From Macrostomum lignano (lineage: Eukaryota): DNA of 64,000 nucleotides. Below, piece by piece: positions 1 to 62,533 of this stretch; the stretch's first letter is position 1; every line of letters starts with the position of its first letter. Both the position numbers and the translations under genes were made by a program. The notes beneath the pieces were generated by a model. That model was not told the DNA's origin. It saw only the letters and a list, made by a program, of their open reading frames with translations, and ran no database searches. The stretch lies in NCBI GenBank assembly GCA_002269645.1, contig NIVC01000735.1, positions 62,001 to 126,000 on the forward strand, read 5' to 3'.

Positions 1-40
1 TGATTGGCAGCTAGGGCCAGTGATCTCATGGAAGCTACTG

Positions 41-1140
41 GAACATCTAGGAAAGTTCTGCAACATCAGGCCAAGTTCTGCAACATCAGGCAAAGTTCTG
101 CAACATCAGGCAAAGTTCTGCAACATCAGGCAAAGTTCTGCAACATCAGGCAAGTTACTGGAACACCAGGGAAGCTACTGGAACACCAGGGAAGCTACTG
201 GCACACCAGGGAAGCTACTGGAACACCAGGGAAGCTACTGGAACACCAGGGAAGCTACTGGAACACCAGGGAAGCTACTGAAACACCAGGGAAGCTACTG
301 AAACACCAGGGAAGCTACTGGAACACCAGGGAAGCTACTGGAACACCAGGCAAGCTACTGGAACACCAGGGAAGCTACTGGAACACCAGGGAAGCTACTA
401 CTGGCACACCAGGGAAGCTACTGGAACACCAGGGAAGCTACTGGAACACCAGGGAAGCTACTGGAACACCAGGCAAGCTACTGGAACACCAGGGAAGCTA
501 CTGGAACACCAGGGAAGCTACTACTGGCACACCAGGGAAGCTACTGGAACACCAGGGAAGCTACTGGAACACCAGGGAAGCTACTGGAACACCAGGCAAG
601 CTACTGGAACACCAGGGAAGCTACTGGAACACCAGGGAAGCTACTGAAACACCAGGGAAGCTACTGGAACACCAGGGAAGCTACTGGAACACCAGGCAAG
701 CTACTGGAACACCAGGGAAGCTACTGGAACACCAGGCAAGCTACTGGAACACCAGGGAAGCTATTGGAACACCAGGGAAGCTACTGGAACACCAGGGAAG
801 CTACTGGAACACCAGGGAAGCTACTACTGGCACACCAGGGAAGCTACTGGAACACCAGGGAAGCTACAGGAACACCAGGGAAGCTACTGAAACACCAGGC
901 AAGCTACTGGAACACCAGGGAAGCTACTGGAACACCAGGGAAGCTACTGGAACACCAGGGAAGCTACTAGAACACCAGGGAAGCTACTACTGGAACACCA
1001 GGGAAGCTACTGGAACACCAGGGAAGCTACTACTGGAACACCAGGGAAGCTACTGGAACACCAGGGAAGCTACTACTGGAACACCAGGGAAGCTACTACT
1101 GGAACACCAGGGAAGCTACTGGAACACCAGGGAAGCTACT
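41..1140. repeat. 20-bp minisatellite (gaacaccagggaagctactg), preceded by a related unit caacatcaggcaaagttctg; lies in a TRPM intron
   Basis: Directly visible tandem units with occasional cta insertions; it accounts for ORFs 4..1377, 20..301 and 764..970. Confidence 0.95.
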
Positions 1141-1301
1141 GGAAGATCAGAGAAGCTACCGGAGCAGCAGAGAATATACTGCAACATCAGGGAGATTCTG
1201 AAGCATGAGGATGGATGCTGCAATTCGGTCCCTGAGTCAGAAAAGATTCTGTCAGCACCCATGAGCGCAGCGATCCCGGGGCATGGCTGCAAAAGTCTCA
1301 C

Positions 1302-3434
1302 CGGTTCCGCTTGCCGTCGTCCACCAGCAGGTAGTGCGTGTGGTTGGCGTTCAGCGACACCGGCTGGCCCTTGCTGATCACGTTGCTGATTTTGTATTCG
1401 ACGTCGAGGCTCAATTCGCCTGTCTTCGGGTCTCGTTTGTTGATGAGGTGGTCCCGGTTTAGTACGTAGCCCCAGGGCGCCACCCCGATGCACCTGGATG
1501 TTTGGGAAGGCGAGCGACTGCAGGCTCTGCTCATATTAGTGCTTTTCTTTCGTTACTATGCTCTTGTCACCCTTTCCTGGCACTCTTTGCCCATATGCTG
1601 TCCTCTCTTGGCATGCTTCTCTCTCCTCCTGTCAGTCTATCTCGGCACTCTCTATCCCCAGACATTCTATCTGGGCACTCTCTGTCCCCAGACATTCTAT
1701 CTTGGCACTCTCTATCCCCAGGAATTCTATCTTGGCACTCTCTATCCCCAGGAATTCTATTTGGGCACTCTCTGTCCCCAGACATTCTATCTTGGCACTC
1801 TCTATCCCCAGAAATTCTATCTGGGCACTCTCTATCCCAGGAATTCTATCTGGGCACTCTCTATCCCAAGGAATTCTATCTGGGCACTCTCTATTCCCAG
1901 GCATTCTATCTCGGCACTCTCTATCCTCAGGCATTCTATCTCGGCACTCTCTATCCTCAGGCATTCTATCTCGGCACTCTATCCGATCCGATTCCATTAC
2001 AGTACTTATATGCCTAACTGTGTATATCTCAAACGCGCTCACCTCAGCTTTGAGGACCTGCTGGACTTCTCCCAGTGGGAGGCGCGGCCCTCCTCCAGTG
2101 CGTTGCCGACCACGCGGGTGATGCCCAGATTCAGGCCGGAGGTGATGATCCAAGCGTTGGTGGTCTGGGCCGCCCTGATCAGGCCGTGATGGAAGACCTC
2201 CTTTTTTCGGCCCTCCAACTTGAAGTTCTTGGCTCCGCCGATCACGGAGATGCAGAGCGACGGCTTTTGGGGATCGGCCAGCTGCCAGTGGGTCTTCATC
2301 AACTCTGGGAGGTTCCAAAAATGGAGCACAGTTAGAACATCATGAAAGCATTATCGAGAAGCCACGAAAATGTTTCAACGACCATTCTCATTCTGCTTTA
2401 ACAAACGTCCTTTGTTTAGCTGGAACCCCAATGCTCCTCGGTCGCTAAGCTGGCTTCCTAACCCAGCACCTGAGATGTACACTCAGGCAGCTCACCCAGC
2501 ATTTTGTCCATGCTGTCCTCGTCGCAGACACGGGCAAAGTGGATCGGGTCCCGGTTGTCGAAGCCTTCATTCTTCAGCGTGATCCTGCCGTAGGCGTTGG
2601 TCACGCTGCGTCTCATGTGTGTTGCTTCGTTCCACTTCTCCTGCGAGCGATTGAGAGATTGGAGCAATACAAGAGGATGGCTTGCCATACTCCGTTAATC
2701 ACGAGTGCTCAGTGCGCTACCCTAAGTGCTCAGAGCGCTACCCTGAGTACTCGTGCGCTATCCTGAGTGCTCAGTGCTCTACTCTCTAACAATCTACTCC
2801 AAAGAGCTATATGGGAGTCAATATGATTTCAGTATGAGATATGGGATAATGGGATTTCAATATGGGATAAGGGATTTCATTATGCTCCAAATTCCTATGG
2901 AGGGCCCAAAAGCTGTTATAGAATAAAAGTTCTGGGAACTCAGGATGGTCGTAGCTACTGCTTAAAAGGGAAAATTCTCACCTCTGGACCAGCGGGCAAA
3001 AGGCCGTCGTGTTTTTCCCTCACTTCCCCGCAGGCGCATTTTTTGCCGTCCTTCGCCTCGAACAGGCAGCACTCCTTGCGCTGGAAATTTGCCAGAATGA
3101 ACTGCCGGAGGCTGCGCTGCTGCTCGACCAGCTGCTCCTGCAATTGGCGTCGGTGCGAAAATTCTGTCTCTACCGATCTCACCTGGTCAAACTGATTTCA
3201 GTTATTCAATTTATCTCTACTTGCCTCTCTCTTTCTTTGCGACCGCGCACGGCTGAACCGGGCCGTTCCGATCTCCTCGTTGGCTGCACCGTCCACCTCC
3301 TCGGAGCGGGCCGTGTCATAGGCCGGGTTTGTGTAGCTGTTGAGGCTGCTGCGCAGGTCAGATCTGCTGCGTCCTGCAGCACTCTGCCCGGGCGGCTGCA
3401 GACTCTCGGATGGCAACACGCCAACTCGAGACAT
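1302..3434 (-). CDS. TRPM: TRPM-family cation channel, N-terminal MHR/SLOG region; gene continues left of exon 1493-1302
   Basis: Exons 3434-3225, 3182-2982, 2640-2496, 2304-2043 and 1493-1302 have matching phases. Family motifs: FILANFQRKECCLF...CACG, TNAYGRI, PSLCISVIGGAKNF...GLIRAAQTTNAWIITSG, CIGVAPWG...LNANHTHYLLVDDG. Subfamily not assignable. Confidence 0.92.
1626..1985. repeat. About 30-bp minisatellite (attctatctgggcactctctatcccagg-like) in a TRPM intron
   Basis: Visible tandem units; source of the FYLGTLYPQ ORFs. Confidence 0.93.
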
Positions 3435-4257
3435 TGAGCAGTTTCTGTTACAATTTAAATAACAGCAATGGTTGCCTTTTAAAACAACTAGATTTAGGAG
3501 TTATTTTTTTCCGAAATCAACTCATTATTTATGCAGCTTTAATAATATAAAGAAGTAGCAAGACACAAAAACATCTTTTCTAACCAAACGAAGAAGCCTA
3601 CCTAAATCATCTCTGCCAAATTTATAGCTGATGATTTTGATAACTTCGTTAAACTGACCATCAGTATACACATAAATACGACAAAGGCATGTCCTATTAG
3701 GCCATCAAGCTATTTAAAATAAAGAAAGCGTATAAAAATTGTAGCATTTTTAGTAGATTTTCCAGGTGCGAACAACTAATATCCGTCTAGCTAGAGAGAT
3801 TGAATTTTTAATGCGAATTCTCAGCATATCAAAACAATTCTGATCCTTAGGAAAAATACTTTAAACTTACCAATTAATCGCTTTAATTTATAATTTACTG
3901 ATAATAAAATGGAGCATGTTTACATCAAAGGAAAATATTTTTATACAACTTCTTGTTACGGATCTACTGGGGTGAAACTCGATAATTAAATATGCTAATG
4001 CAAAGAATTTGAAAGAGACATGTGTTCATCAGTGAAAAATAATATTAAAATATTTGCAAATAAAAAGTAAACAAAGTACTATTTTAGCTCTTTTATATTT
4101 ATTCCATATATATTGTGATCTTTAATTTATTAAATAAAATATTCGTAAGTTGTTTTTGTTATAGCTTACTTAAAAGTATTTAAAATTTAAACTGATTTTA
4201 ACCGTCTACATTTTAATAATTTAATAATAATATTAATTTTAATAATACCTTAATAAT

Positions 4258-4990
4258 TTTACAAATATCGTAACTCGCATCGTAACTCGTGTAAAAATTT
4301 AACCTTTTGAACAAATTTAACCTTTTGAACTTAATCGTAATTAAACAACTAATGCTAAAATAACTTAAATACACAGAAATATACTGGCCAAACAGGCTTC
4401 TTGCCTGAGCCAACTTACTACTACTACTACTACTATTTATACAAATATCGATTTATAGTCTACTTAATACAAATATCGTGTAGTAATCGTTTTCAGCGAT
4501 CGTGTAAAATTTAACCTTTTGAATAAATACTAAATAAATCGAATCATACTGGCATAACAGGCTCCTTAAGCCTGAGCCAAATTTACTACTACTTTTTACT
4601 TTTGATTTAATTATTTTTAATTTATTATATATTTAAATTATTTAAAATATTATTTAAATAATTATTTAAATTATTTTATTTAACTAACTATATTTAATTA
4701 GTCGGGTTGTATGTAAGTTGTTAAGTCGTTTGAAAAAAACCGTAAAAATAAATCCAGACAATCTTTCAAATACCTTACTTAAGGAAGTTAAGCTACCTGG
4801 TGTGCCAGTAGTAGCTTCCCTGGTGTGCCAGTAGTAGCTTCCCTGGTGTGCCAGTAGTCGCTTACTCATGTAAAAGTAATCAACCTTTTGAGAAAATATT
4901 AAATACATAGAATCATATTGGCAAAACAGGCTCCTCCCCTGGGCCAAATTACCCTATTGCCCTATAATATATTGGCCAAACAGGCTACTT
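4258..4990. repeat. Degenerate AT-rich repeat, 3-4 copies of a block ending in ggc(c/a)aaacaggct...ctgagccaa
   Basis: Shared motifs tcgtgtaaaa(a)tttaaccttttgaa and atactggcNaaacaggctNNNNNcctgagccaa near 4290-4415, 4500-4580, 4870-4945 and, partially, 4970-4995. Confidence 0.7.
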
Positions 4991-5320
4991 GCCAGTTGCC
5001 ATTAGAAAACAGGTTCTGGTGCCAGAATTCTAGCCATTACCATTTGAAATACTAATAGTTTATAGATTAATTTCTTGGAATCAAATATATGTCATTATCA
5101 TATGCCTAACACCCAGCTGACTTAGCTAATTCAGCCAGGTAGCAAAAGGTCTAGCTACTATACTCCCAAAGATGCTATTTTGTGGGGAAAATTCTTGCAT
5201 GCAACTAGGTCCCAGGCAGTCTAGTACCACATGCACTGTGTTTAGCAAGGAGTCACAAAAAGTTTTTTGGTATGCTTTGTGCAAACAGTGCCATGTTTAA
5301 ATTAAAGTTATATTCTTGGG

Positions 5321-5581
5321 AGGCAATGACTAGAGTTCCGGCATTAAAACCCGTTTTCTAACGGCTAGGGATCTGGCAGTGCCATATAGAAGCATATAAA
5401 GACTGCTAAGAACATATCTTAAGAAGTCTGAATATTAGAAGCATCTCGTCCCAAATCTTACCATATTGTCTTAAATTTTAATCTAAAACAAAATATAATG
5501 TTCCATCTATATTATAATGGCACTGCCGGATCCATAGCCGTTAGAAAATGGGTTCTGGTGCCGGAACTTTAGCCATTGCCT
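5321..5581. mobile_element. MITE-like element with about 65-bp inverted repeats
   Basis: 5321-5385 is the reverse complement of 5516-5581 with about 9 mismatches; a third partial copy lies at about 5001-5041. Confidence 0.7.
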
Positions 5582-5599
5582 TCTTGGGACTATGGTCTG

Positions 5600-7250
5600 G
5601 TCTGGTTAAGGTAAGTTATAAAAATGCCAACCCCAAAAAATTAATAAAAAACGGAAGGAAAAAAGACAAGAGAAGATAGAAAACAAAAGGCAGAGAAAAA
5701 ACCAAAAGAAATGAAAAGAAAAGAAAAAAATAGAGACCCCATTAAAACCAGAATAGAGGCAACTAAGTCATCTAGTATAGTTTAAACCTTGGTTATAATA
5801 GAGACCAAAGGCAATTAAGTTGCAACTAAAGGCAACTAAGTAGCAATTTTTAGAAAAGCTAATTCATATTGGCCAAGTAAAACTTCAAAGTTAGATATAT
5901 AATAGAGTCTAAATAATTTAATGAACAAAACTTGACAATTGCCTAAATTATATGCCAAACAAAGCTAGCTTTCTTTCTTTGTTGCAGAAATACTTAAAGC
6001 CTTAGTTAATGATATTTACCAATTATTTTTTAGACTATTTATTTGTATAATAATGGTTAGAATTGCATTTATCTTATTTTTTGCCTTTATTATTCAAACT
6101 ATGTAATATATATACTGGTAATTATAGAAAATCTCTAGTCTATTCCCTAGGCAGTAGGCCTTTTGTGTTAAAAGTGAAGGCATTTATCCTAGGCCATCTT
6201 AGCCCCTATTAACAAAACTACATAATGCCTATACCAGTCTCAAAGATATTAGATGCACACTAGAACAAAGTGGCTTTGAGAAAACTATATGCTTAAATAT
6301 ACATTTTTTGCCAAAGAGTTGCAAAAGTAAACTATGTTATTTAATATTTAACTTATTTACTAATTTAGGCCTATTTTTTAAATGCAACTATAGATTAATT
6401 TTTTGCAAGTGTTTTTTGACATTATATGAATAACTTTTAACTAACAAGAAACAATCTGTAAACATTATAATTATACTAATATATACTAAATTATCACTCA
6501 ATTATTGCATTCAAAATTCTAACATTGATAGATGCATTATAATAATCAATATATCAATATATGCCAAGCCCTACTTGTAAATCTATTATGTATACTAAGA
6601 ATTCTAGTATATAGCCATAGGCCATCTTTGAGACTATAAGGGTTGTTAAGTCCCTGACCCCAAAGACCTAAGAGCTCCCTCACAAAAGCTTTAAAACTAG
6701 CAATATTTATTTATTTTATGGCTAATCTTAGGTTTATCTATTTATAATAAACAACTAAAATTGTATATATTGCTTGACTTCTCTTCTGGCTATAGTAGCT
6801 ACAGAGTAAATCTAATTGATGATACTAATTAGACTTTTTGAACCTTAACAATATCTGACAACCACAAAATCATGTTATATAACGTATTTTAAATTTTGAC
6901 ATACAGATAGATATATTAGGTATTACCTCCTTAACTTTGCTATTTATATTAACAAAGGCAATTTCATCTATAAAAATAACCTTAGTAGAGGAACTATTGG
7001 ACTATATAAGCATAGTTGTTTAGAAGGTTAGTAATTTAATTTTTTTAGCTAAAATATTCTAGTTATTTCATTCTTGCAATAGAACAATAACACAAGCTTA
7101 GCTTAACACAAGTGTATATTTACCTTAAACTAATTACTTCATTGCTTTCTACTTTCATTGCTGCTTCCAATGATGCAATTAACTTTCGTTCTACTGAATG
7201 AAAACATGAAGAAACAATTTTCAACTGAAATTTGCTGGTCTTTTGTGCAA
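5600..7250. mobile_element. Heavily decayed, CpG-free AT-rich segment; probable ancient transposon of unidentifiable family
   Basis: One CpG (about 6883) found by eye between 5653 and 7186; abundant TA/CTAG; no open frame. TE origin is inference. Confidence 0.4.
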
Positions 7251-7343
7251 TCTAATATTATAATGCCTACTTAATAAAACTGTCAAGCTGTAGAAATGTC
7301 TCACTGCACTGCATGTAACTTGCAGCCCTGCTCTCATCCTGCC

Positions 7344-8870
7344 ATGAATGACTTTGCCTCTGACAACTTGGAGGGAAGCAGAAACTACCAGAGCTTCCAG
7401 GCTGACGGCTTGCCCAGGCCGTATCCGCCAATCTGCCAGACGCAGCCGCAATTCGGCCAGCCAAATTCTGACAGAGTTGAATCCGGGTTTCAGCCTCACA
7501 ACCTGGCCTGGATTCCCAATGCCCCATCTGGCGGCTTCTCGCAGAATCCTGCGAGCTTTGGCTCAGCGGCCGCTGGCGCCAGCGCTAATTCTCGCGGCCG
7601 AGGCAGAGGCGCTGGTCGAGGCGCCAGTCGTGGCGCCACTCGAGGCGCCAGCCGTAGCGCCACTCGAGGTGGCTTCCAGCGTGAAAATTCTAATAAGCCT
7701 CCGCAGCAGCAGCAGCAGTTCCAACAACGCCAACAGCAGTTTCAGCAGCCTGAGCTGCAGTTTCAGCAGCCTCAACAGCAGTTTCAGCAGCCTGAGCTGC
7801 AGTTTCAGCAGCCTCAGCTGCAGTTTCAGCAGCCTCAGCTGCAGTTTCAGCAACCTCAAAAGCAGTTTCAGCAACCTCAGCTGCAGTTTCAGCAACCTCA
7901 GCTGCAGTTTCAGCAACCTCGGCTGCAGTTTCAGCAACCTCAACAGCCCCAACAGCAGTTTCAGCCACAGAAGCAGAAAAAGCAATTTCAACACTCAAAG
8001 CAGCGCCAATTCCCGCAGCCACAGCATCAGAATCTGCGGCCGCAGAATTCTCAGAATTCGTTCGGGTCCAGTCGGCCCTGGCAAGTCCAGAGGGGCGGCA
8101 GCAATGGCGCCAGCAAGCGACCTTGGCCGTCATCCTCGGGCTCCAAGGCTTCGAAAATTGCGCGCGTTAATCCGGCAAAAGCGGCCTCGCCCGCCGTCAG
8201 TCGGCGCGACTTCGTGCTGCCCGACGATGCGCCGCACAATTTCAAGCAGCTGGTTGAGAACCAGTGGTGCAGCCTGTGCCTGGCCGGCGTCAATTCCATC
8301 GTCACGGCCGAGGTTCACTACAATGGCAAGACGCACCAGAGGCAGCTGCGCGAGAACGGCCTGCCGGCGGGCGAGTACTACTCAGGCGTGCTCAACACGG
8401 GCAACTCGCAGACGCCCGAGCTGCCAGAGGGCTTGGACACGCAGTACTGCAAACTGTGCGACGTCACCTTCACCAACACGGTGCAGATGTTCCAGCACTA
8501 CTCGGGCAGGAAGCATCGCTCCAACGCTCAGGATCGGACCCTTGTAGAGAAGAAGCAGAGCGCCGAGACCAAAATTTTTCGCTGCGACGTGTGCGGAATC
8601 TTCACGAACACGCAGGACTCGCTGGACTGCCACCTGGGCGGCATGAAGCACAAGGCTATGCTGGAGGCGCGCAACCAGCCCAAGAAAGATGAGGGGGTCG
8701 GCCAATTAGCTGATGAGAAGGGCTCGGCAGCCCAGAAACCGGCGGAGATGTCAACTCACATGGAGTCTAGCGAGCACAAGGACCAGCTGTCAGCCAACAA
8801 GGCCGCCATGGTTGCATCGGACTCGCCTGCGTCCGGCTCTGCCAGCGTGTCCAGCGGCAAGAAGTTCTGA
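7344..8870 (+). CDS. Intronless protein with an RG-rich segment, (QQPQLQF)n repeat and three matrin/U1-type C2H2 zinc fingers (ZNF385/ZMAT/ZNF346-like dsRNA-binding family)
   Basis: Fingers CSLC...HYNGKTH, CKLC...HYSGRKH and CDVC...HLGGMKH. ATG 7344 (gccATG) follows a ttgcag acceptor-like site; the upstream in-frame ATG at 7296 is an alternative start. Confidence 0.88.
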   Translation: MNDFASDNLEGSRNYQSFQADGLPRPYPPICQTQPQFGQPNSDRVESGFQPHNLAWIPNAPSGGFSQNPASFGSAAAGASANSRGRGRGAGRGASRGATRGASRSATRGGFQRENSNKPPQQQQQFQQRQQQFQQPELQFQQPQQQFQQPELQFQQPQLQFQQPQLQFQQPQKQFQQPQLQFQQPQLQFQQPRLQFQQPQQPQQQFQPQKQKKQFQHSKQRQFPQPQHQNLRPQNSQNSFGSSRPWQVQRGGSNGASKRPWPSSSGSKASKIARVNPAKAASPAVSRRDFVLPDDAPHNFKQLVENQWCSLCLAGVNSIVTAEVHYNGKTHQRQLRENGLPAGEYYSGVLNTGNSQTPELPEGLDTQYCKLCDVTFTNTVQMFQHYSGRKHRSNAQDRTLVEKKQSAETKIFRCDVCGIFTNTQDSLDCHLGGMKHKAMLEARNQPKKDEGVGQLADEKGSAAQKPAEMSTHMESSEHKDQLSANKAAMVASDSPASGSASVSSGKKF

Positions 8871-10057
8871 ACTTGAGCTGCTCTGTGTTGTCAGATCCGC
8901 TATCAGCATTTCTTTATTGAGTAACCGCTGTAGCGGTTGCCGTGTGTAACCCTATATTCAATACGAGAGGTGCTACATGAATTTTGGGACTGTGAACGAC
9001 AGGAGTGTCCAGTGAGCCACAACTCCTCGCACATCTGGTCTGTTGAATAGTACAACTGCAGAAACAGCCGAAGTGCTGAGCAAAACTTATTGAGTTTTAA
9101 AGATAAGGAAGATGATGAATGCAGTGTAGGCGAGGCACAGTTGCACTTTAAAGCTGCTTTGCGAACAGAGCAGGTGTGCGAGGAGTTGTGACTAAAATTA
9201 CAGCTCATCTGGAGTCTGGGCATTACTGTCGCTTTGAGTAAAGACAGTCCGAAAACTTCTGCAATACCTCTTGTATTTTGTCACCCCGCCCGGTTCATAG
9301 CGCTGAACTGTCAGAACAAAACACTGTGCATTCAGTATTCGCACTTCTGGCTTTACGGTAATTATCATTAAAATTTGATCTGCAATAAATGCTAAGTTGT
9401 TATTAAAGCATAATTAGTACTTTTTGAGTACTATTGATGGTAAACGTCCTGTTACCGCTGATATCGATGACAAACACAATTGTTGAAAGAAATCTTTTGT
9501 TCATCTGCTCAGGCTGCAGATTTCGTGCAATGAATGGCAACTTCACACTAATGCTTTCATAGTTCGACTATTTATTAAATACCTGTGGCTGGTTCATTGG
9601 AAATCATGCAATCAAGGTGTGCAGTTCGAATTGTCCAGCAATTGTTCGGTGTAGGCGACATCGTGCAGACAGATGCCACTGAGCCTGGGGGGGGGGGGGC
9701 AGTGGGAAATCCACTTCGTATGTCCTTAATGCGCAAACTTCCTATTGCTTACAATAATACGAGCAAAGTGCACACGGTAAAACAGTCTTCGGAGAACAGG
9801 CAGGATTAAGAATGCAAACGATCGAGTTGGGAATAAACAGGGGTCGCGAGGAGTAAAATTCCTAAGGCCAACTAAACATCTGCGCAGCGGCTTGCATGAA
9901 AACTCGATGAATAAAAATTTAAGGGATGGCCAGCAAAAGTAAACATTTCAATTGGAATTTGAACGTATGCGACAAGTAATGCAATGTAGAAAGCAAAACT
10001 ATGTACTATTATATACTCTTATTTATACATATTTGCGCTTATTGTGGTTTCATATAA

Positions 10058-11807
10058 TCATAGATTGTCCAGGGAGAAGGAGGGCGATACACTGGCTGCG
10101 GTCTGCGGCGGCTGCTGCTGGTCGGGGGTGGCGCCTGCGCCCTCTTGCAGGCGGGCACGCACGGTGTGCATGACAAGTTGCAGGCTCTCCTGGTCCAGCA
10201 GCCGGATGAGGCGCAGCACGGCTGTACGAACTTCCGTCATGGCGTAGCGAGGCAGCGGCGCGACAACACCTGCAGCCGCCGCTGTACTCGGGCGGCTGGC
10301 TGGCGACATCGAATTCGCTGCCGCCGACGATTCAGAAATTACGACAGGTGTGTCGGCGCTGGTCGTCGGCGCTGGTGTTGGTTTTGACGGCTCTGCAGAC
10401 GAAGCTTCGGCGTCCCCGGTCCCAGCGGCACTCTCAGCAGCCTTGCTTCGCAAGGCCGGTTCCTCTGGAGGCGACACGGCGGCCTCGTTCAGCTTCACGT
10501 CCTCGGCTGGCCGCATTTGCTCAGCAAGGTTCAGAAGCAGAGGAGGCTCGCTGGCTACCGCCGGCTCAACTGCAGTCGGCCGCGCTGGCGGCTGCTCGAA
10601 CAGCAGGCCGTCGGATTCGCTGCGTGCCCGCTCCTCTGGGCTGATTTCTGTGAGGGAAAAACCGCAGCGAAATTTATAAATAGCTCTCCATAAAGACTGG
10701 CGGTCATTGTGTGTCCATTGTGAATGCATATTCACTTACCCATGTCATCGAGTTTTAGTAGTTGCTCAAGATTCCTTACAATAGTGCAGCGGTACTTCGG
10801 ATTCTTGGTGCATGGATTGCCAGCTAGCCAAAGAACTTGAAGATTTGGTAGATCTTTTAGATAGAATATTTCTTGCAATTCTTCAATGCAGTTGCTTCTC
10901 AAAAATAGCTCCCTGAGGTTGGGGCACTGGCCAAATGGCTCAAGACTCGAAATCTTATTAGCACTAAAAGAAAAAACAATTTTTGATGATGCTATGTACA
11001 GAAAATATGAATCAATCAAGTCATTTAAAATTATATTGACTCACTTCATAGATGCAACCTCAAGTTCAGGTATTTCTGTAACAATACTGCAGTCTGTGAT
11101 CTTCTGTCCCCTAAAATAGCAAAACAGGTAGGTTAAAAGCATGTTTTCAAACAAAATCTGCTATAGTTAAACCATTCTGGTTTTCCATTAAAGAATAACC
11201 CAGAAAAATCAGCTTTCGATTAAATTTCTGATTAATTTTCACTTTTTAATATTAAATTAAAATATACTCAGGAACATTGAAAAGTCGCCAACCTTTGCCC
11301 CAGTGAGCAGTGTCTTTGATCAGCGTCTACACATCACCTAACTATTTTGATATTTAAAAAATGCTTGAAAAAAATTAAAACCAGGCGAAAGCTTCAATCC
11401 GTCCAATCTTCGCCCTCCACTCCTCCCGATCCCTCCACACCTAGCCCAATTCGCGTGGCGCAAGTTGTGTCACTCAAAAGTCAATACTGAGCTAGAATTT
11501 GCTGCGCACTCTCAAAGGTGGCGACTTGTTAATGTTGTTGAGTATACATTCACAAATGGAAGAGAAATTTCCCCACCAAAGCTATGTGTTTCTATAAAAG
11601 ATCAAAGAAACAAAAAATAACATACCATACAACGATCTTTTTAATTTCAATGAGACTCCCTCCTTTAGACTTCGACAACACAAGATCTTTAGTCAGCTTC
11701 TTTCCAACAGGGAGCTGTTCACTTTTAATTGGTGGAGTAAAGCTCGGAGACGAATTTGGTGCAGTACCTCCTGGGCTTGAACTGTTTGATGCTCCGCTTG
11801 ATTCCAT
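10058..11807 (-). CDS. CFAP410: Cilia- and flagella-associated LRR protein 410 (C21orf2 homolog)
   Basis: Exons 11807-11626, 11110-11045, 10963-10740 and 10647-10058 are phase-consistent. Reads KLTKDLVLSKSK...IKKIVVWGQKITDCSI...NANKISSLEPFGQCPNLRELFLRSN...LQVLWLAGNPC, with the C-terminal helix VRTAVLRLIRLLDQESLQLVMHTVRARL typical of the family. Confidence 0.9.
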
Positions 11808-12293
11808 TTAGTGAAATTATATGATTAGGGTTTAATATTAAAAAATCTATTGTTGAAAACTTTACCCGAATCATAGGAATGAACGTTAAATCAATTTCCT
11901 CGAGGTCATTCAAAACTTGCCGTCATTGTACACAAAATTCAATTTTTGAAAAGAAATACTTTCTAATATTTAGCATTTTTCAACCATTATCTATCATTCT
12001 AAGCTGATGCTAAATTCTGACTAGGCAATGTAAAACACGCTTCTTTATTCTTTGTTAAAAATGCAAAGATGACTTCTAAATGTAGTTGATTTAGTTCCTG
12101 AAACAAAAAAAAATAGACAGTAAATCTAATAAAATGAAAAATAAAGCAATTTATTTTTAGCAACGCTATAAAAGGCACCATTTTTGAGTATTTGTTTTTC
12201 TGAGTTTTTTCTATGTTTTTAATCATAGATCATTAGAATACAGAGAATATATATCGAGCGTTATTCTCTGTTTGAATAAAGATCTATGTGTCG

Positions 12294-12565
12294 GACACTG
12301 AGCCTTTTCATATTACCAATTCCAGAACCAGAATCGGTTCGGAATTCCAAGAAAAACAGCAGTATAACTATTAAACTCTGTTAATATTTGACTGCCTTAA
12401 CAACCTAACTTAGCACAATTTTTCACTTTCTTCTTGGCCATTGTCATTCAATAATAAAAACTATATAGTACGTATCTCTGTCTAGTTATGGAGACAAAAA
12501 GTTATACTTCACAAATTGGTTCTGGTTCTGGAACCAGAACAAGCAATATGAAAAGGCCCACTGTC
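12294..12565. mobile_element. MITE-like element with about 50-bp imperfect TIRs
   Basis: gacactgagccttttcatatt...ccagaaccagaa on the left matches the reverse complement of ttctggttctgg...aatatgaaaaggcccactgtc on the right. Confidence 0.7.
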
Positions 12566-12958
12566 GATCGATCGTCGAGTCAGTTAACTTTATTCTATTA
12601 TCTATTCATACATTAATAACCAAAGTTCTATGTGTCTTCTGATTCTAAAATAGATAAAATCTAGATCATATCAAAAAATTTTATGGCAATTTTTATTTGT
12701 GCGTTTTAAATAATTGCAAGGCAGAGAATATCGAGCGCTATACATAGAATGCCAACCGCTAAAGGAATGCATAAGGCAAAAGTAAAGCCAATTTCACCAC
12801 AAAGCCGGTCATTTCTCTTTTGGCCTTAGACAAATTAGGCCAAATTATTTTCGTTAATTATATAGGCCAAATAATTTCATTAAGTTCATTATTTTTGCTA
12901 ATGCGACTTGTTAATAGCAAATACATATGTAACAATTCTCTTAATAATCTATTTTGAG

Positions 12959-13118
12959 CAGTGGCACAAAAACAAAAAGGCGGGGGACCGAAAAAAAATC
13001 AAAGGGGGGACCAAGCGAATTTTCGCCAAAAACAGCCACCCCTCCACCGCCCCCCCCCCTCCTGGGACTTTACCCTCAGAATCCGCCCCCCCTTGAAAAA
13101 TTTCTGGTTGCGCTACTG
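12959..13118. mobile_element. 160-bp non-autonomous hAT-type element (MITE)
   Basis: Ends cagtggcaca... and ...tgcgctactg are imperfect TIRs. Perfect 8-bp TSD attttgag at 12951-12958 and 13119-13126; 8-bp TSDs are typical of hAT. Confidence 0.85.
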
Positions 13119-13249
13119 ATTTTGAGCTTAGTAATATGGCACTGCTTCCAGCAATTATTCATTAGATTACCATTTCTGGCCCAAAGGCAAATGCCCAGAT
13201 AAAAATATTGCACGCAAAAATCAGCTTCACTTTCTTATTGCTTGTTGGC

Positions 13250-13965
13250 ATTCTATGTATAGCACTTGATAGGCCTATTCTCTGTCGCAAGGTGACCTTC
13301 CATCACTTCTTGACTTAGCTGCAGGGGGTTCCGTGTGTCCAGAGACAGCAAGGTGGCGTTGCCACATACTTTGCTAGCCTCTGGCAACCATGGGCAGCTA
13401 GTGCTGCAGTGTCACGCAAGGAGTTCTAGTGGTACCAGTGTCCACAGTGTGGTTCCCCTCTGGAGAATCCAGGAGGTAGATTGTTGCTTGCCTGGTAGCC
13501 CTTAGGTAATGGATAAACTGGCAGAGATTCTTGGGCCTGAAAATGTTGGAGAGGTCTAGGTTTAGGCTAAAGTAGGTGAGCTTGTCATGAGTAAAGAGGG
13601 GGTATTCACAGATGAAGTGCTCCACATTCTCAACACCAGAGTGACAAAAGGGCATTCCTCACTGTGGATTTTCCCCTAGAGGTGACGATGCCTCGCAAAG
13701 CAGCCATGACCCAAGAGGGCCATGGTCATTATCTTGATGTCCTTGCAATTGAGTCTAAGCAGGGCCCTGCGCAAGGCAGAGAAAGGACAGGGGATAGCTG
13801 CACAGGATTGCTGGCAGTTGTGGGTATTAGCCCATCTCTCTTTGTGCTTAGAAGTCACCCACTGCTACTGGTTGATACAAGTGGTGACAACGGCGATAGG
13901 GATAAAGGCCATAGGCAGGGGACCTTCCATCACACATTAACCATAATGATTGAAGGCGAATGACA
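13250..13965 (-). mobile_element. 5'-truncated LINE 3' end (I/LOA/R1-like ORF2 C-terminus with CCHC zinc knuckle)
   Basis: Reads ...[54 protein letters not shown]...FIHYLRATR; internal TAG stops. Confidence 0.8.
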
Positions 13966-14559
13966 TTCCATAACTTATAGGCAATAATGCTATTGTAATG
14001 ATGTTTATCATACAATGCAATCAGTGAGAAACTTTTAATAACCTTTTCTCTACTAATTTTTCTATATTACTAGTTGATTTTATATAGTCAATTCTTTATT
14101 AACTTTTTATTTAACCAATTTCTATGCCCAATGGCAATATGTTTTTAGCTTTTTAAATTCATTTTATCTATTTTTCAAATTGTTGTATTGATAAAAATAA
14201 ATCACAAACAACAAGAGTCATCAAAACATTTGTAACAGTACTTGGAAGTCAGTTAAGATTGTATACCAGTATACACTGGAATAAAAAATTGCTTCCCTAA
14301 CTTATGTATACCAATGGACTTTTTATTGTATATAAAAAAATGGCAAAAAAAGTTTACATATTATGACCAATATTTAATGCTTTTAAATTTTTTAAGGTTA
14401 GATTTTTAAAGATTAAAAGATAACAAGTAAAAAAGATTTTTTTTATTGAATTGTTAAAAAAACTAGGCCTAGTTTCTTTTAACTATTTTTTATTTAATTT
14501 TAATTTCTTAAAAAGTAAGTAATAGTTTTTTTTAAATTAGTTTTCCATTTTTAGAAGAA

Positions 14560-15560
14560 CCAGTAAGCTCTAACTCTAACTATCAATGTTGGGTACTAGC
14601 CATAGTTTGGATTGTATATTAGTGTATATTAGATTTAATGCTAGAAAAATGATGAGACCTCATTTATATGTTGGGTTTGTATGCCAATACCAAAAAATTG
14701 TCATTTGACTCAATGTATCGACTGTCATGTACGCTAGGATATATCCTGATGTATGTTAAAAAATAGTAAGACCCATGTTGTATGCTAAGAAATCTCAGCA
14801 TATATGTCACCTTCTGAACTTTGGGGTACCAATCTTTTAATAAATGTTAATTAGTTAATTGGCATTAATAACAGTGTTTTGCTGTAGCTACAGCTATAGC
14901 TATGGGATCTTATGGCAAATATTGTAAAATAGGTGCTTATAACAACTATGGATATGCCTACAATAGAGAGCTGCTCTTACAGCTAAGACTATAGAACTAT
15001 AGTAGTTGCTGTCATATTCTATAGATTCCTATAGCCATAGTTATAAATTAAAAAAAAATTGAAACAGGTAGAGTAAAACAAAAATACCTTTGTAAACTGC
15101 ATCATAGATTTAAAAACAAAAAATTATACCTAATAAATAATCAATTTGGTCCAAATGCTTGTGAGCCAATGGCAAACTCTTGCCTTCTCACAACCACCTA
15201 AGGGTTGTTGCGCACCGCTGGAATGTCAGCGTCTATACTGGTAATTTTCAGTTGCTTTTCCAGAGCTCTTCTCAAATCTGATAACCAACTGGAACTGTTC
15301 CTTCAATTGCTGTTGCTTTTTCTGCAATGTCAACAAAGGGTTCGTCTCAATTGCATTAAGTAGCAGTTGGACCTGTGTAACAACTTGCCTTGGTGATTGC
15401 CACCTTTCACAGGCAACCTATGCCAGAAGTGGTTTCAACATGCTAATGGATGCTGTAAACCATCTTTCTTCTATATTCAGCAACCTTGCAATATCCTTTG
15501 GGTGTTCACCTCTGTTGAGTGCTTTGATCACAAGCCAGTGGCATACATTTGACAACATAG
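14560..15560 (-). mobile_element. Decayed Tc1/IS630-like DNA transposase (N-terminal HTH region recognisable)
   Basis: MLSNVCHWLVIKALNRGEHPKDIARLLNI, then after frameshifts VYSI..., LLNAIETNPLLTLQKKQQQLKEQF and PAVRNNP*VVVRRQEFA; many stops. Catalytic DDE residues not confidently recovered. Confidence 0.6.
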
Positions 15561-15699
15561 CATGGTTAACATAACAAAGTTGATTTGCTAAAACAGTTGG
15601 AATTTTGTAAAAAATTCAAGTTTATCTTTTTAATCTTAGAACATTTAATTATTTCAAAAAGTATAGAAGCACTTAGATTTAGCTAATGCCTGTTTTTTA

Positions 15700-16170
15700 A
15701 TGCACACAAATTTGCCAACAGAGATTTAATATAGACAAATTGGCAAAAGCAAATTTGGCAACAAATCTTTTATATTATAATTCCATATACTAAAAATGAG
15801 TTATAGTTAAAGTTAAAGAAAATTACATATAATAAGGTTTTTTAAAATGCTTGTGAAAGTTCCATTTTTCTGAAATTTGGCTATGCATTTCTGTCTGCTT
15901 CCTTAAAGCCATTGGCATTGTAAAGTGCTTTCACCCAGATGCAATGACAAGTCAAAATGCATATTATCTTATCTGATTGTCAATTTGAAAAAAAAACTAA
16001 AGAGGAAAAGCTAATATGCAATGACTAATACCATTGTCCAAAAAAATAATAAGATTATACTCAATTATTCTTCCTTAATTTTTGTCACCAAATTCAACTA
16101 GATTGTTGCCAAATTTGTCCATAGTGAATTTCTGTTACCAAATTGCTACATTTGTTTGTGGCCAAATTGG
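15700..16170. mobile_element. Foldback/MITE-like element with degenerate inverted repeats (caaatttggcaac modules)
   Basis: About 15700-15770 matches the reverse complement of about 16095-16165. Confidence 0.55.
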
Positions 16171-16599
16171 TCAGCACCCATTTTTAGCCCCTCCAAATAG
16201 AATTCTTTAATCTACCTATATTAATTTTTACATGTATTTCTTATATGGATTTTCTATTCTTATGTCCTAACCTTTGCCATATTTAGGAAGGAAAGAAGGA
16301 AGTTAGTAATTTCAATTTGAACCATTTAGGTTTGAAGTATTTTTTGGCTTTTAATCCCTAAAAACTATACATTAGTAATTTTGAGTTATAACTAAAATTT
16401 TATTTTTGTTTACAATCAAAATAAATTGTAATATTAAAAAATGATATACTTTAAGAGATGGATTTTTTAAGAAACATACTTGCAAAGTAAAATGACATTT
16501 TTAGCGTTTAGGAGGAATTTTAGCATCTAGTACTGCAAGACACCCCATATGCAACATTGCCCTTGGGAGCAGCAGCAGCCAATTGGGAATTATTGTTTA

Positions 16600-16990
16600 G
16601 CAGATTACATAGAGCACCACCTGGCAAGTGATCAACGACCTCATGGTGGAAGAGAACCAGCATGTGCACTGCAGCAACCTATACAAATGGTAGGGCAGGT
16701 GGGTAGTGAGTGGGTCACAGTTTTCAATTTCATTCAATCGCACATAGTTGGTTGTACTATTCTTGTAGTTCCCCTACCTGTAGAGCCTAGCCAAAAAAGT
16801 CATTAACAAGTCCAGCTCTGAGACATCAGAGATGAGGGCTGCCCATATGGCCTTGGCATCCTTTAGTGCTAGTATGGCATTAGAAAGGTTGGGGAAAGAC
16901 CCACTGATAACAAAGTTGATGCCTCAGACACATTTACTGCTGAGATACTTTGCACCACTTTGATGACTGATGCCAATGGCATTATAAGTT
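16600..16990 (+). pseudogene. Possible decayed coding fragments of unknown origin
   Basis: STTWQVINDLMVEENQHVHCSNLYKW followed by gtagg, and DIRDEGCPYGLGIL*C*YGIRKVGERPTDNKVDASDTFTAEILCTTL; TAG stops, CpG-poor. No family recognised. Confidence 0.3.
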
Positions 16991-17341
16991 TATGGTTTGC
17001 ATTCAAAATTTGAGACCCAGATACTAAACAAAGGAATTAATTAAAATTTTAGATTTAAGATTTTAGATTTTTAGATTTTAGATTCTAAAAAATAGATTTT
17101 ATTCCTTATTATTGGAATAAGTAACCAGATTTTTCACAAATTCCAACTATACAAAAATTTGTAAAATCAATTTTGATAATAGCCTGCTTTCCTACTCAAG
17201 GGTGAGAGTATGCTTTAAAGTTCTTTAGAACTCAGGATGCCATAGTGGAATGTGAAATGTCTTAAATTTAAATAACTTTACAATACTATGATTGACATAT
17301 CACATCATTCCTCTACTTGCAGTTCAAACCCAATAGCAATC

Positions 17342-30316: not shown

Positions 30317-31410
30317 GGTGTGGGAAATCTCTTGTGGTGTGGGAAATCTCTTGTGGTGTGGGAAATCTCTTGTGGTGTGGGAAATCTCTTGTGGTGTGGG
30401 AAATCTCTTGTGGTGTGGGAAATCTCTTGTGGTGTGGGAAATCTCTTGTGGTGTGGGAAATCTCTTGTGGTGTGGGAAATCTCTTGTGGTGTGGGAAATC
30501 TCTTGTGGTGTGGGAAATCTCTTGTGGTGTGGGAAATCTCTTGTGGTGTGGGAAATCTCTTGTGGTGTGGGAAATCTCTTGTGGTGTGGGAAATCTCTTG
30601 TGGTGTGGGAAATCTCTTGCGGTGTGGGAAATCTCTTGTGGTGTGGGAAATCTCTTGTGGTGTGGGATATATCTCGTGGTGTGGGAAATCTCTTGTGGTG
30701 TGGGAAATCTCTTGTGGTGTGGGAAATCTCTTGTGGTGTGGGAAATCTCTTGTGGTGTGGGAAATCTCTTGTGGTGTGGGAAATCTCTTGTGGTGTGGGA
30801 AATCTCTTGTGGTGTGGGAAATCTCTTGTGGTGTGGGAAATCTCTTGTGGTGTGGGAAATCTCTTGTGGTGTGGGAAATCTCTTGTGGTGTGGGAAATCT
30901 CTTGTGGTGTGGGAAATCTCTTGTGGTGTGGGAAATCTCTTGTGGTGTGGGAAATCTCTTGTGGTGTGGGAAATCTCTTGTGGTGTGGGAAATCTCTTGT
31001 GGTGTGGGATATATCTCGTGGTGTGGGAAATCTCTTGTGGTGTGGGAAATCTCTTGTGGTGTGGGATATATCTCGTGGTGTGGGAAATCTCTTGTGGTGT
31101 GGGAAATCTCTCGGGTGTGGGAAATCTCTTGTGTGTGGGAAATCTCTCGAGTGTGGGAAATCTCCTGTGGTGTGGGAAATCTCTCGGGTGTGGGAAATCT
31201 CTTGGGTGTGGGAAATCTCTTGGGTGTGGGAAATCTCTTGGGTGTGGGAAATCTCTTGGGTGTGGGAAATCTCAGTTGTAGGAAATTTCTCCGGTGTGGG
31301 AAATCTCTCCGGTGTGGGAAATCTCTCGGGTGTGGGAAATCTTGGGGTTTGGGAAATCTCTCGATATGTGGGAAATCTCTCGGGTGTGGGAAATCTCTCT
31401 GAATGTGGGA
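30317..31410. repeat. 19-bp minisatellite (tgggaaatctcttgtggtg), degenerating toward the right
   Basis: Direct; source of five overlapping repeat ORFs. Confidence 0.96.
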
Positions 31411-60745: not shown

Positions 60746-60814
60746 GTAAGCCAGAGGTCGGAAAATGCTTTTACCTTGTTGTATATGCACCCTAAGTGCA
60801 TATTGTACGAGCTA

Positions 60815-62330: not shown

Positions 62331-62533
62331 CAAGTCGCGCCCAGTAAACAAAGACAAGGCTTGGTATGAGTCAGGTGCGAAATCGTATATTTGAGGTTTC
62401 GTATATTATCTAGGCTTAAAAGTTAGACAAATAATAAGGCTTAAAACTTTGAGTTGCTCGCTACTGAAAATCTTTATGCTAAGGGGGAGAAAGAGAATGT
62501 ACACAGGCGGCCGCGTACATTGGTGTATACAAG

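What the first reader, a model, noticed from the sequence alone, without database searches (positions are those of the whole stretch)
5000..7250. RIP-like C->T hypermutation of repeats in an animal genome (island 1)
Seen: only one CpG between 5653 and 7186, while the adjacent zinc-finger exon is CpG-rich, and TA/CTAG words are abundant. Aligning three copies of the 65-bp inverted repeat by eye (5001-5041, 5321-5385, 5516-5581) gives about 16 differences. All but one or two are C:G<->T:A transitions, and they fall in CpG but also CpA/TpG, CpT and CpC contexts. Established: CpG methylation alone converts CG to TG/CA and does not produce a CA->TA excess; fungal RIP does. Inference: a repeat-targeted cytosine mutator, or dense non-CpG methylation, acts here. 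I know of no described RIP system in animals, but could not search the literature.
Basis: partly seen in the sequence, partly recalled or inferred. Interest (0 to 1): 0.82.

Follow-up and report, generated by a model that had tools for sequence, protein, structure and literature searches.

The report
CpG-free transposon spacer in a flatworm
This is an AT-rich, transposon-filled spacer between two genes of the flatworm Macrostomum lignano that has lost nearly all its CpG sites; that looks like ordinary DNA-methylation decay rather than a fungal-type repeat mutator, but two short transposon-like patches nearby carry an unexplained excess of C-to-T changes outside CpG.

Summary
The window is Macrostomum lignano (assembly GCA_002269645.1, contig NIVC01000735.1). 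The CpG desert is real. Positions 4861-7186, leaving out a young MITE, hold 2 CpG against 44 expected. The other compositional claims fail: TpA is at expectation (214 vs 201±9), CpA and TpG are not depleted, and 0 of 211 windows pass standard RIP indices. CTAG is no more enriched than TGCA or AGCT.

Two further assembled copies of the locus let me measure substitutions directly. In the bulk of the island, transitions equal transversions (about 1:1), as in the flanks. Sixteen tandem arrays, including 147 near-identical CpG-bearing units, and the triplicated coding sequence show no C→T hypermutation. That rules out a duplication-triggered, RIP-type mutator.

Best explanation: CpG decay driven by germline methylation of transposon-derived spacer DNA, on top of a genome-wide GC→AT bias. 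Reviews report that M. lignano keeps DNMT1 and DNMT3.

The five MITE arms differ by 18 transitions and 1 transversion, about half of them outside CpG. Segment 4998-5321 shows 25 transitions to 5 transversions. A 1-kb transposon-like patch at 12890-13900 shows 21-22 C:G→T:A against 0-1 reverse transitions and 2 transversions, spread over all three copies (scan permutation p≈1e-5), mostly at CpA and CpT. That residue is unexplained and needs a genome-wide test.

The parts
3435..4860 (.). AT-rich but CpG-normal part of the spacer between the TRPM-like gene (minus strand, start near 3434) and the zinc-finger gene. It contains dispersed short repeats (4287-4993) and a 23-bp x3 minisatellite (4796-4863).
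   Evidence: Segment 4000-4997 has 17 CpG, o/e 0.95, at 27% GC. Repeat families D1-D4. Gene calls. It shows that AT-richness here does not require CpG loss.
4861..7186 (.). CpG-depleted domain ('island 1')
   Evidence: 2 CpG against 44.4 expected and 80 GpC, excluding MITE B; Poisson P = 5e-17. The orthologous L001 segments are equally depleted, o/e 0.05-0.23.
4998..5041 (+). Remnant (right terminal inverted repeat only) of MITE copy A. The full element survives in the homeolog at L001 7234-7528.
   Evidence: Copy A predates the split of the copies and has lost nearly all its CpGs: the whole 295-bp element in L001 keeps 2 (o/e 0.23) and the window remnant none.
4998..5321 (.). Transition-rich segment: the MITE A remnant plus 280 bp of unidentified CpG-free DNA
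   Evidence: Against L001: 25 transitions and 5 transversions, with 8 transitions at extant or inferred CpG. The flanks 2703-7295 give 70:67, Fisher p = 0.001.
5313..5321 (+). Left target-site duplication TTCTTGGGA of MITE B
   Evidence: Read directly. The empty site TACTTGGGA is at L001 7801-7809.
5322..5580 (.). MITE copy B: 259 bp, about 64-nt terminal inverted repeats (5322-5385 and 5517-5580), no ORF. It inserted after the window/L003 lineage split from L001.
   Evidence: Inverted repeat I1 is 88% complementary. The element is absent from L001 and present in L003. It still holds 7 CpG, o/e 0.69.
5581..5589 (+). Right target-site duplication TTCTTGGGA of MITE B
5591..7186 (.). CpG-free, 28% GC DNA of unknown origin reaching to about 130 bp upstream of the zinc-finger gene. 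No second copy was found in the 107 kb in hand.
   Evidence: 2 CpG, o/e 0.07, GpC o/e 1.82. Only colinear homeolog matches. Homeolog differences are about 1:1 transitions to transversions.
7296..8870 (+). Single-exon zinc-finger gene (zf-met / U1 / JAZ-type fingers, Q-rich 21-bp coding repeat) that bounds the island
   Evidence: Pfam zf-met 1.6e-17. 100% match to the annotated M. lignano protein P0001. CpG o/e 0.79.
12890..13900 (.). Outside the given coordinates: a C:G→T:A hypermutation patch in transposon-like DNA inside the second CpG-depleted domain (13001-17250)
   Evidence: 21 C>T-class, 1 T>C and 2 transversions across the three copies. The single T>C is better read as a CpG G>A using a paralogous copy as outgroup. 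Scan-permutation p = 1e-5.

Best explanation
Island 1 is the divergent intergenic spacer between a TRPM-like gene and a zinc-finger gene of Macrostomum lignano. It is built largely of transposon debris, including two copies of one MITE family.

Its CpG-free state is most simply the footprint of cytosine methylation in the germ line, or in the stem cells that make it, directed at particular spacer or transposon segments and not at exons. Methylated CpG deaminates to TpG/CpA far faster than other sites mutate, so old segments have no CpG left, while a recently inserted MITE still has most of its CpGs.

The AT-richness is a separate and general property of non-coding DNA in this genome. It comes from a genome-wide GC→AT mutation bias and is also found in neighbouring DNA that keeps its CpGs.

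The process is not triggered by sequence duplication, so it is not RIP.

Shown here: the depletion, its sharp borders, its dependence on element age, the mutation spectra, and the absence of a RIP signature. Inferred: that methylation is the cause, and that it is aimed at transposon-derived DNA.

Left open: why two or three still GC-rich transposon-like patches also accumulate C→T at CpA and CpT.
For: Organism and locus.

CpG depletion is domain-like with sharp borders, and it is shared by the homeologs.

Age series within one MITE family:
- Copy B is post-split, with a perfect 9-bp TSD and an empty site in L001. It keeps 7 CpG.
- Copy A is pre-split. It keeps 2 CpG in the whole element in L001 and none in the window remnant.
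- CpG columns show CG, TG and CA in different arms.

The (CpA+TpG)/(ApC+GpT) ratio is higher in the CpG-free DNA (1.13-1.47) than in the CpG-normal AT-rich neighbour (0.81). This is the direction expected from CpG→TpG/CpA and the opposite of RIP.

AT-richness without CpG loss is seen at 4000-4860 (27% GC, CpG o/e 0.95-1.22).

Genome-wide GC→AT bias: non-CpG C>T 0.0196 per site against T>C 0.0068 in 8871-17046.

No duplication-triggered mutator:
- 16 tandem arrays (about 13 kb) have transitions:transversions of about 0.95 and CpG>T 2.1%, equal to CpH>T 2.1%.
- The 147-copy 13-bp array is 99% identical with its CpG intact.
- The triplicated zinc-finger CDS differs by 9 transitions and 16 transversions.

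Literature: M. lignano retains DNMT1 and DNMT3 and has low-level 5mC, with the genomic pattern not described (PMC11292947, PMC9246332, PMC10658182, all citing Wasik et al. 2015, which I could not read).
Against: No methylation data were available, so methylation of these particular sequences is an inference from CpG loss.

The CpG-free stretch 5591-7186 has no second copy in the 107 kb examined, so its transposon origin is unproven.

A CpG-only model does not explain three things:
- the nine non-CpG transition columns among the MITE arms;
- the 17 non-CpG transitions against 5 transversions in 4998-5321;
- the 17 non-CpG C>T against 2 transversions in 12890-13900.

Non-CpG C>T per site is also somewhat higher in CpG-poor than in CpG-normal windows (40/1534 vs 19/1198), though not significantly (p = 0.08).
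Confidence: 0.62

Rival explanations
1. A transposon-targeted cytosine mutator with broad context. Dense methylation covers CpA and CpT as well as CpG (a DNMT3-type activity, possibly guided by small RNAs), or a DNA deaminase acts in situ on transposon-derived DNA in the germ line. Either would convert C to T until the element is burnt out into AT-rich, CpG-free DNA. This would be a functional analogue of RIP that recognises element identity rather than duplication.
For: Patch 12890-13900: 21-22 C:G>T:A, 0-1 reverse transitions and 2 transversions, arising independently in all three copies (window 12, L001 5, L003 4) and on both strands (12 G>A, 9 C>T). Fisher p = 1.5e-7 against the rest; scan-permutation p = 1e-5, or 7e-5 with CpG events removed.

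Per-site rates there are CpG 10%, CpT 5.4%, CpA 4.4% and CpC 1.4%, against about 1.5% for every context in the background. T>C and transversions are not raised.

4998-5321 shows 25:5.

Among the MITE arms, the non-CpG changes that can be polarised by majority are all C:G>T:A.
Against: The numbers are small: about 20 to 30 events per segment, and the segments were picked after looking at the data.

Long-term composition does not show the expected CpA or CpT depletion or TpA excess in any CpG-free segment.

The AT-rich bulk of the island and the 14-16.5 kb domain have about 1:1 transitions to transversions.

The context preference rests on 17 events; CpC against CpA+CpT is only about p = 0.07 by my estimate.

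The transposon identity of 13270-13960 rests on a motif I recognised from memory. Pfam found nothing.
Confidence: 0.2
2. True RIP-like system: a homology search detects duplicated DNA and mutates C to T, chiefly at CpA, in all copies.
For: Only the transition-dominated differences among MITE arms and the AT-rich, CpG-poor look of the island.
Against: 0 of 211 windows pass the RIP indices; the island composite index is -0.09 to 0.06 (thresholds from PMC6963459).

TpA, CpA and TpG are at expectation.

Tandem arrays up to 1.9 kb at 85-99% identity are unmutated and keep their CpGs.

The whole region exists in three copies at 95-99% identity, yet exons have CpG o/e about 1 and transitions:transversions of 9:16.

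There is no CpA preference in the background or in CpG-poor windows: CpA 0.028, CpC 0.027, CpT 0.023.
Confidence: 0.02
3. No targeted process at all. The CpG-free DNA is simply old transposon or spacer DNA whose composition was inherited or reached by context-dependent mutation without methylation. The transition-rich patches are chance, or imports by ectopic gene conversion from diverged family members.
For: The relationships among the three copies are mosaic, which shows that conversion or recombination happens here.

Two arms (window B-left and L001 A-right) share the same G→A pair at columns 42-43. That fits subfamily variants or conversion.

The 16501-17046 block in L003 has equal C>T and T>C, as an imported tract would.
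Against: Conversion from other copies should bring changes in both directions, plus transversions. The 12890-13900 patch has essentially one direction, in three lineages.

CpG loss with sharp borders next to equally AT-rich CpG-normal DNA, and graded by element age, is hard to obtain without a CpG-specific process.

Permutation p = 1e-5 argues against chance.
Confidence: 0.12

Closest known systems
Methylation-driven CpG decay of transposons and intergenic DNA (DNMT1/DNMT3 systems of vertebrates, plants and some invertebrates)
   Same: There is a strong, domain-wise CpG deficit with GpC unaffected. The deficit grows with element age. CpG columns split into TG and CA. The TpG+CpA surplus is relative to neighbouring DNA. 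The host is reported to have DNMT1 and DNMT3.
   Different: In most invertebrates the methylated, CpG-poor compartment is the gene body. Here the exons are CpG-normal and the spacer and transposon DNA is depleted. The methylation pattern of any free-living flatworm was called unknown in a 2022 review (PMC9246332). Extra C→T at CpA and CpT in some patches is not part of the classical picture in animals.
Fungal repeat-induced point mutation (RIP; RID/DIM-2 dependent)
   Same: In the patches, the changes are C:G→T:A only, fall on both strands, are confined to a roughly 1-kb stretch, and leave CpC the least affected.
   Different: There is no dependence on duplication and no CpA→TpA compositional signature. 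The RIP indices are negative. The density is far lighter, about 1-3% of C/G per lineage. The organism is an animal, and no RID-like gene was examined.
AID/APOBEC editing footprints in animal germline genomes (APOBEC3 on mammalian retroelements and endogenous retroviruses; PMC6955324, PMC4864454)
   Same: It is an animal precedent for clustered C→T / G→A hypermutation of mobile elements that becomes fixed in the genome.
   Different: APOBEC footprints are strand-coordinated, depend on the 5' neighbour (TC or CC), and arise on single-stranded replication intermediates before integration. Here the changes arose after integration, independently in three orthologous copies. Both strands are mixed and there is no clear 5' preference: ApC 5.2%, CpC 4.9%, TpC 5.7%, GpC 2.1%.
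MITEs (non-autonomous DNA transposons)
   Same: The element is 259 bp with about 64-nt terminal inverted repeats, a perfect 9-bp target-site duplication and no ORF. It is present or absent between homeologous copies, with a clean empty site.
   Different: The superfamily is not assigned. No autonomous partner and no further copies were available in the data.

Membership tests
Fungal RIP | Mutations are C:G→T:A transitions almost exclusively | tested here: inconclusive
   Met in the patch 12890-13900 (21-22 of 24) and among the MITE arms. Not met in the bulk of the island, 5805-7290, where transitions:transversions are 28:27.
Fungal RIP | Dinucleotide bias (CpA→TpA) leaves high TpA/ApT and low (CpA+TpG)/(ApC+GpT). 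RIPper criteria: product >1.1, substrate ≤0.75, composite >0. | tested here: not met
   0 of 211 1-kb windows pass. The island gives product 1.14-1.20, substrate 1.13-1.23 and composite -0.09 to 0.06 (thresholds from PMC6963459). TpA z = 1.4, CpA z = -0.7.
Fungal RIP | Triggered by duplication; all copies of any repeat above a few hundred bp are hit, tandem repeats included | tested here: not met
   16 tandem arrays show transitions:transversions of 0.95 with CpG retained. The triplicated CDS gives 9:16. The threshold length is from my own knowledge of Neurospora.
Fungal RIP | Depends on a RID/Masc1-type or DIM-2 cytosine methyltransferase acting before meiosis | not testable with these tools
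Methylation-driven CpG decay | CpG deficit not explained by base composition, with GpC normal | tested here: met
   2 CpG against 44 expected and 80 GpC; in the second domain 25 against 133 expected and 189 GpC.
Methylation-driven CpG decay | CpG transitions are faster than other substitutions in the affected DNA, and decay products are TpG/CpA | tested here: met
   MITE age series and CG/TG/CA columns. TG-vs-CA pairs between homeologs. CpG>T is 4/40 in the patch against 9/518 in the background. Counts are small.
Methylation-driven CpG decay | The host encodes maintenance and de novo DNA methyltransferases | not tested
   Taken from the literature only: DNMT1 and DNMT3 are reported for M. lignano (PMC11292947, PMC9246332).
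Methylation-driven CpG decay | 5-methylcytosine is actually present on these sequences in the germ line | not testable with these tools
   This needs bisulfite or nanopore data.
MITE | Short, non-coding, with terminal inverted repeats and a target-site duplication, and an empty site in a related sequence | tested here: met
AID/APOBEC editing | Strand-coordinated clusters with a 5' TC/CC (or WRC) preference | tested here: not met
   12 G>A and 9 C>T are interleaved on the plus strand, and 5' neighbour rates are nearly flat.
DNMT3-type non-CpG methylation footprint | C→T enriched at CpA (then CpT) and least at CpC, symmetric between strands, confined to targeted elements | tested here: inconclusive
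   CpA 7/159, CpT 8/147 and CpC 2/142 in the patch; flat in pooled CpG-poor windows. There are too few events.

The most novel reading that the evidence does not exclude
Macrostomum lignano has a transposon-directed cytosine-to-thymine mutation process that works in situ on integrated elements in the germ line, in CpG, CpA and CpT contexts. It recognises element identity, for example through small-RNA-guided DNMT3 or a recruited deaminase, rather than duplication. It gradually burns elements down to the AT-rich, CpG-free islands seen between genes. That would be an animal counterpart of RIP/MIP-type genome defence.
Probability: 0.15. Interest if true: 0.8.

Novelty: new member of a known kind. 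Interest (0 to 1): 0.42.

Why it matters
Flatworms are usually cited as animals that lost DNA methylation. M. lignano is the exception that keeps DNMT1 and DNMT3, and reviews state that its methylation pattern is unknown.

The sequence footprint here makes a testable prediction. Methylation, past or present, sits on spacer and transposon DNA and not on gene bodies. That is the reverse of the usual invertebrate pattern and closer to the genome-defence use of methylation.

If the extra C→T at CpA and CpT in transposon-like patches holds genome-wide, it would show a mutagenic arm of transposon control in an animal. It would also help explain the sharp AT-rich/GC-rich mosaic of this very repeat-rich genome.

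If it does not hold, the finding is an ordinary case of CpG decay.

Tried and rejected
1. More copies of the MITE family. Only two elements (five arms) exist in the window plus two homeologous loci, 107 kb in all. The public DNA collections offered are prokaryotic, viral or metagenomic, so no genome-wide scan was possible.

2. A transposon protein as a handle on many M. lignano loci. The degraded retroelement tail at 13.3-13.9 kb found no homologue and no Pfam family.

3. A spliced TRPM fragment, to fetch the upstream homeologs and paralogous triplets. It returned only other species.

4. The 23-bp x142 array in the L003-specific 5.3-kb insertion, as an independent polarised test in CpG-poor DNA. 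Its variants are a mix of transitions and transversions that spread by array turnover, so it is not informative.

5. CpG-poor against CpG-normal windows, pooled. Non-CpG C>T is 1.66-fold higher but not significantly so (p = 0.08-0.17).

6. GC content as the explanation for high transition:transversion ratios. The background rates predict only about 1.5-1.75 at 40-49% GC (computed), not 5-11.

7. Rfam and tRNA scans of 1-20 kb, looking for an RNA gene or SINE origin of the patch. Nothing was found.

8. The primary paper on M. lignano methylation (Wasik et al. 2015) is not held in the library.
Full report
IDENTITY OF THE SEQUENCE

The 524-aa ORF at 7296-8870 is 100% identical to an annotated protein of Macrostomum lignano, and 94% identical to a second one. 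Exact look-up places the window on contig NIVC01000735.1 of assembly GCA_002269645.1. Window position 1 is contig position 62001, derived.

Two more assembled copies of the locus exist:
- L001 on NIVC01001143.1;
- L003 on NIVC01002755.1.

ANATOMY

Island 1 is the spacer between a TRPM-like gene on the minus strand (start near 3434) and the zinc-finger gene. From left to right it contains:
- AT-rich DNA that keeps its CpGs (4000-4997: 17 CpG, o/e 0.95, 27% GC), with short dispersed repeats and a 23-bp x3 minisatellite.
- The right arm only of a MITE ('copy A', 4998-5041). The complete copy sits at L001 7234-7528.
- About 280 bp of unidentified CpG-free DNA.
- A complete MITE ('copy B', 5322-5580) with about 64-nt inverted ends and a perfect 9-bp duplication TTCTTGGGA on both sides. 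It is present in L003, while L001 has a clean empty site.
- 1.6 kb of CpG-free, 28% GC DNA that runs to about 130 bp before the zinc-finger gene and has no second copy in the 107 kb available.

THE OBSERVATION

The CpG claim holds and is stronger than stated. Positions 4861-7186 without copy B hold 2 CpG, against 44 expected and 80 GpC. A second depleted domain lies at 13001-17250, with 25 CpG against 133 expected.

The other compositional claims do not hold:
- TpA is 214 against 201±9.
- CpA and TpG are at expectation.
- The CpG-normal neighbour has the same TpA level.
- CTAG is enriched about 2.4-fold over base composition. So are TGCA and AGCT, and a second-order Markov model predicts 14.6 against 15 observed.

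The transition-only pattern among the inverted-repeat arms is real: 18 transition columns and 1 transversion column among five arms. Half of these sit at four or five CpG sites, including columns that read TG in some arms and CA in others. Those are the two products of one lost CpG.

IS IT RIP?

Three defining features were tested and failed.

Composition. With the published RIPper thresholds (product >1.1, substrate ≤0.75, composite >0; PMC6963459), none of 211 windows in the window and both homeologs qualifies. The highest composite value belongs to the CpG-normal segment, not to the island. The substrate ratio (CpA+TpG)/(ApC+GpT) is higher in CpG-free DNA (1.13-1.47) than in the CpG-normal neighbour (0.81). 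That is what CpG→TpG/CpA produces, and the opposite of RIP.

Spectrum. The bulk of the island (5805-7290) differs from L001 by 28 transitions and 27 transversions, like its flanks.

Trigger. This genome offers ideal RIP substrates in the same window. There are sixteen tandem arrays totalling about 13 kb, one of them with 147 copies of a CpG-containing 13-mer at 99% identity. The whole locus is also present in three copies at 95-99% identity. The arrays show transitions:transversions of about 0.95, and CpG sites mutate no faster than other cytosines. The triplicated coding sequence differs by 9 transitions and 16 transversions and has normal CpG content.

WHAT EXPLAINS THE CpG DESERT?

The pattern is a mosaic. 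Equally AT-rich segments lie side by side, one with normal CpG and one with none, and the borders are sharp.

Within one MITE family the loss scales with age. The copy that inserted after the copies split keeps 7 CpGs. The copy that predates the split keeps 2 in the whole element in L001, and none in the window remnant. This is the behaviour of methylated CpG.

Reviews state that M. lignano, unlike planarians and parasitic flatworms, keeps DNMT1 and DNMT3 and has low-level 5mC. They also say the genomic pattern is undescribed (PMC11292947, PMC9246332, PMC10658182). I could not read the primary paper.

AT-richness is a separate matter. It occurs with or without CpG loss. The polarised three-copy spectrum outside the island shows a general GC→AT bias: non-CpG C>T 0.0196 per site, T>C 0.0068.

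My best explanation is therefore methylation-driven CpG decay of spacer and transposon DNA on top of a genome-wide AT-biased mutation pressure. The step from CpG loss to methylation is an inference.

WHAT IS LEFT OVER

First, 4998-5321 differs from L001 by 25 transitions and 5 transversions. Only 8 of the transitions are at extant or inferred CpGs. The flanks give 70:67 (p = 0.001).

Second, and outside the given coordinates, a 1-kb stretch at 12890-13900 carries 21 C>T-class changes, 1 T>C and 2 transversions when the three copies are compared.
- The stretch has 48% GC and CpG o/e 0.31.
- Part of it is repeated elsewhere.
- Part of it reads, with a frameshift, like the C-terminal cysteine-histidine motif of a non-LTR retrotransposon ORF2. 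That reading is my own recognition; Pfam found nothing.
- The single T>C is better read as a CpG G>A, using a paralogous copy as outgroup.
- The changes arose independently in all three copies (12, 5 and 4) and on both strands (12 G>A, 9 C>T).
- Per-site rates are CpG 10%, CpT 5.4%, CpA 4.4% and CpC 1.4%, against about 1.5% for every context elsewhere. T>C and transversions are not raised.
- A permutation test that allows for scanning gives p = 1e-5, or 7e-5 without the CpG events.

GC content cannot account for this, because the background rates predict transitions:transversions of only about 1.5-1.75. Ectopic conversion should import changes in both directions, so it does not fit either.

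Against reading too much into it:
- There are few events, and the segments were chosen after looking.
- The long-term composition of CpG-free DNA shows no CpA or CpT depletion.
- The pooled contrast between CpG-poor and CpG-normal windows is not significant (p = 0.08).
- The AT-rich parts of both depleted domains have an ordinary spectrum.

I leave this as an unexplained residue. It fits broader-context methylation of young transposon DNA better than a deaminase of the APOBEC type, because strands are mixed and there is no 5' preference.

COMPARISON WITH KNOWN SYSTEMS AND NOVELTY

The closest known system is methylation-driven CpG decay of transposons. The unusual points are the host, a flatworm whose methylation pattern is undescribed, and the compartment: spacer and transposon DNA are depleted while exons are spared, the reverse of typical invertebrate gene-body methylation.

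The locus resembles RIP only in the purity of C→T within the patches. It is not a member of that family.

Animal precedents for fixed C→T hypermutation of mobile elements do exist (APOBEC3 footprints; PMC6955324, PMC4864454), but they differ in strand pattern, context and timing.

I rate this a new member of a known kind, of moderate interest. I give about a 15% chance that a genuinely new, transposon-directed, broad-context cytosine mutator lies behind the patches.

LIMITS

All substitution counts come from one locus in three copies. No methylation data and no genome-wide repeat set could be reached.

Noticed in passing
window 12890-13900: A 1-kb transposon-like patch where the three homeologous copies differ almost only by C:G→T:A transitions: 21-22 against 0-1 reverse and 2 transversions. 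They arose independently in each copy, mostly at CpA and CpT. Scan-permutation p = 1e-5.
   Followed up: yes
window 12300-12559: A roughly 260-bp element with 40-nt imperfect inverted ends (12294-12333 / 12526-12565). It is present only in the window copy and absent from both L001 and L003. This looks like a very recent MITE insertion, so MITEs seem to be currently or recently mobile in this genome.
   Followed up: partly
L003 4418-9741 (between window 6964 and 7058): A 5.3-kb insertion specific to the third copy, mostly a degenerate 23-bp minisatellite (TTTAATGTTTGACATGGTGGCTC, about 142 units, 78% matches). It has CpG o/e 0.2-0.5 and raised CpA/TpG, which is a classical CpG-decay composition.
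   Followed up: partly
window 2500-17050 vs L001 and L003: The relationships among the three copies are mosaic. The window and L003 are about 99.8% identical over 2557-6500 and L001 is 4-9% away. From about 7000 onward all three are 1-2% apart, and L003 becomes the odd one out at 16500-17046. This points to recombination or gene conversion between homeologous or allelic copies.
   Followed up: partly
window 30-1193, 30317-31398, 41030-42333, 42990-44906, 46881-47966, 48839-49934 and about 25 more: There is an extraordinary density of minisatellites, with periods of 12-43 bp and arrays up to 1.9 kb, inside and between genes. The 13-bp array CCAGATCCCGATC has 147 copies at 99% identity. The 20-bp unit of the 30-1193 array recurs as a 23-bp x3 mini-array at 4796-4863.
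   Followed up: partly
window 7710-7942: A 21-bp tandem repeat lies inside the zinc-finger coding sequence and encodes a (QFQQPQL)n tract. Its copy number differs between the homeologs: the proteins are 517, 499 and 515 aa.
   Followed up: no
window 52631-52882: A degenerate hexamer array GGGTAG (about 42 units, 70% matches), G-rich and telomere-like but not the canonical TTAGGG.
   Followed up: no
window 53000-64000: A uniform 51% GC stretch with many short ORF pieces that I judged by eye to resemble discoidin and C-type lectin domains; I ran no domain search on them. This is probably one long multi-exon gene. A 41-bp x8 perfect tandem repeat sits at 58681-59008.
   Followed up: no
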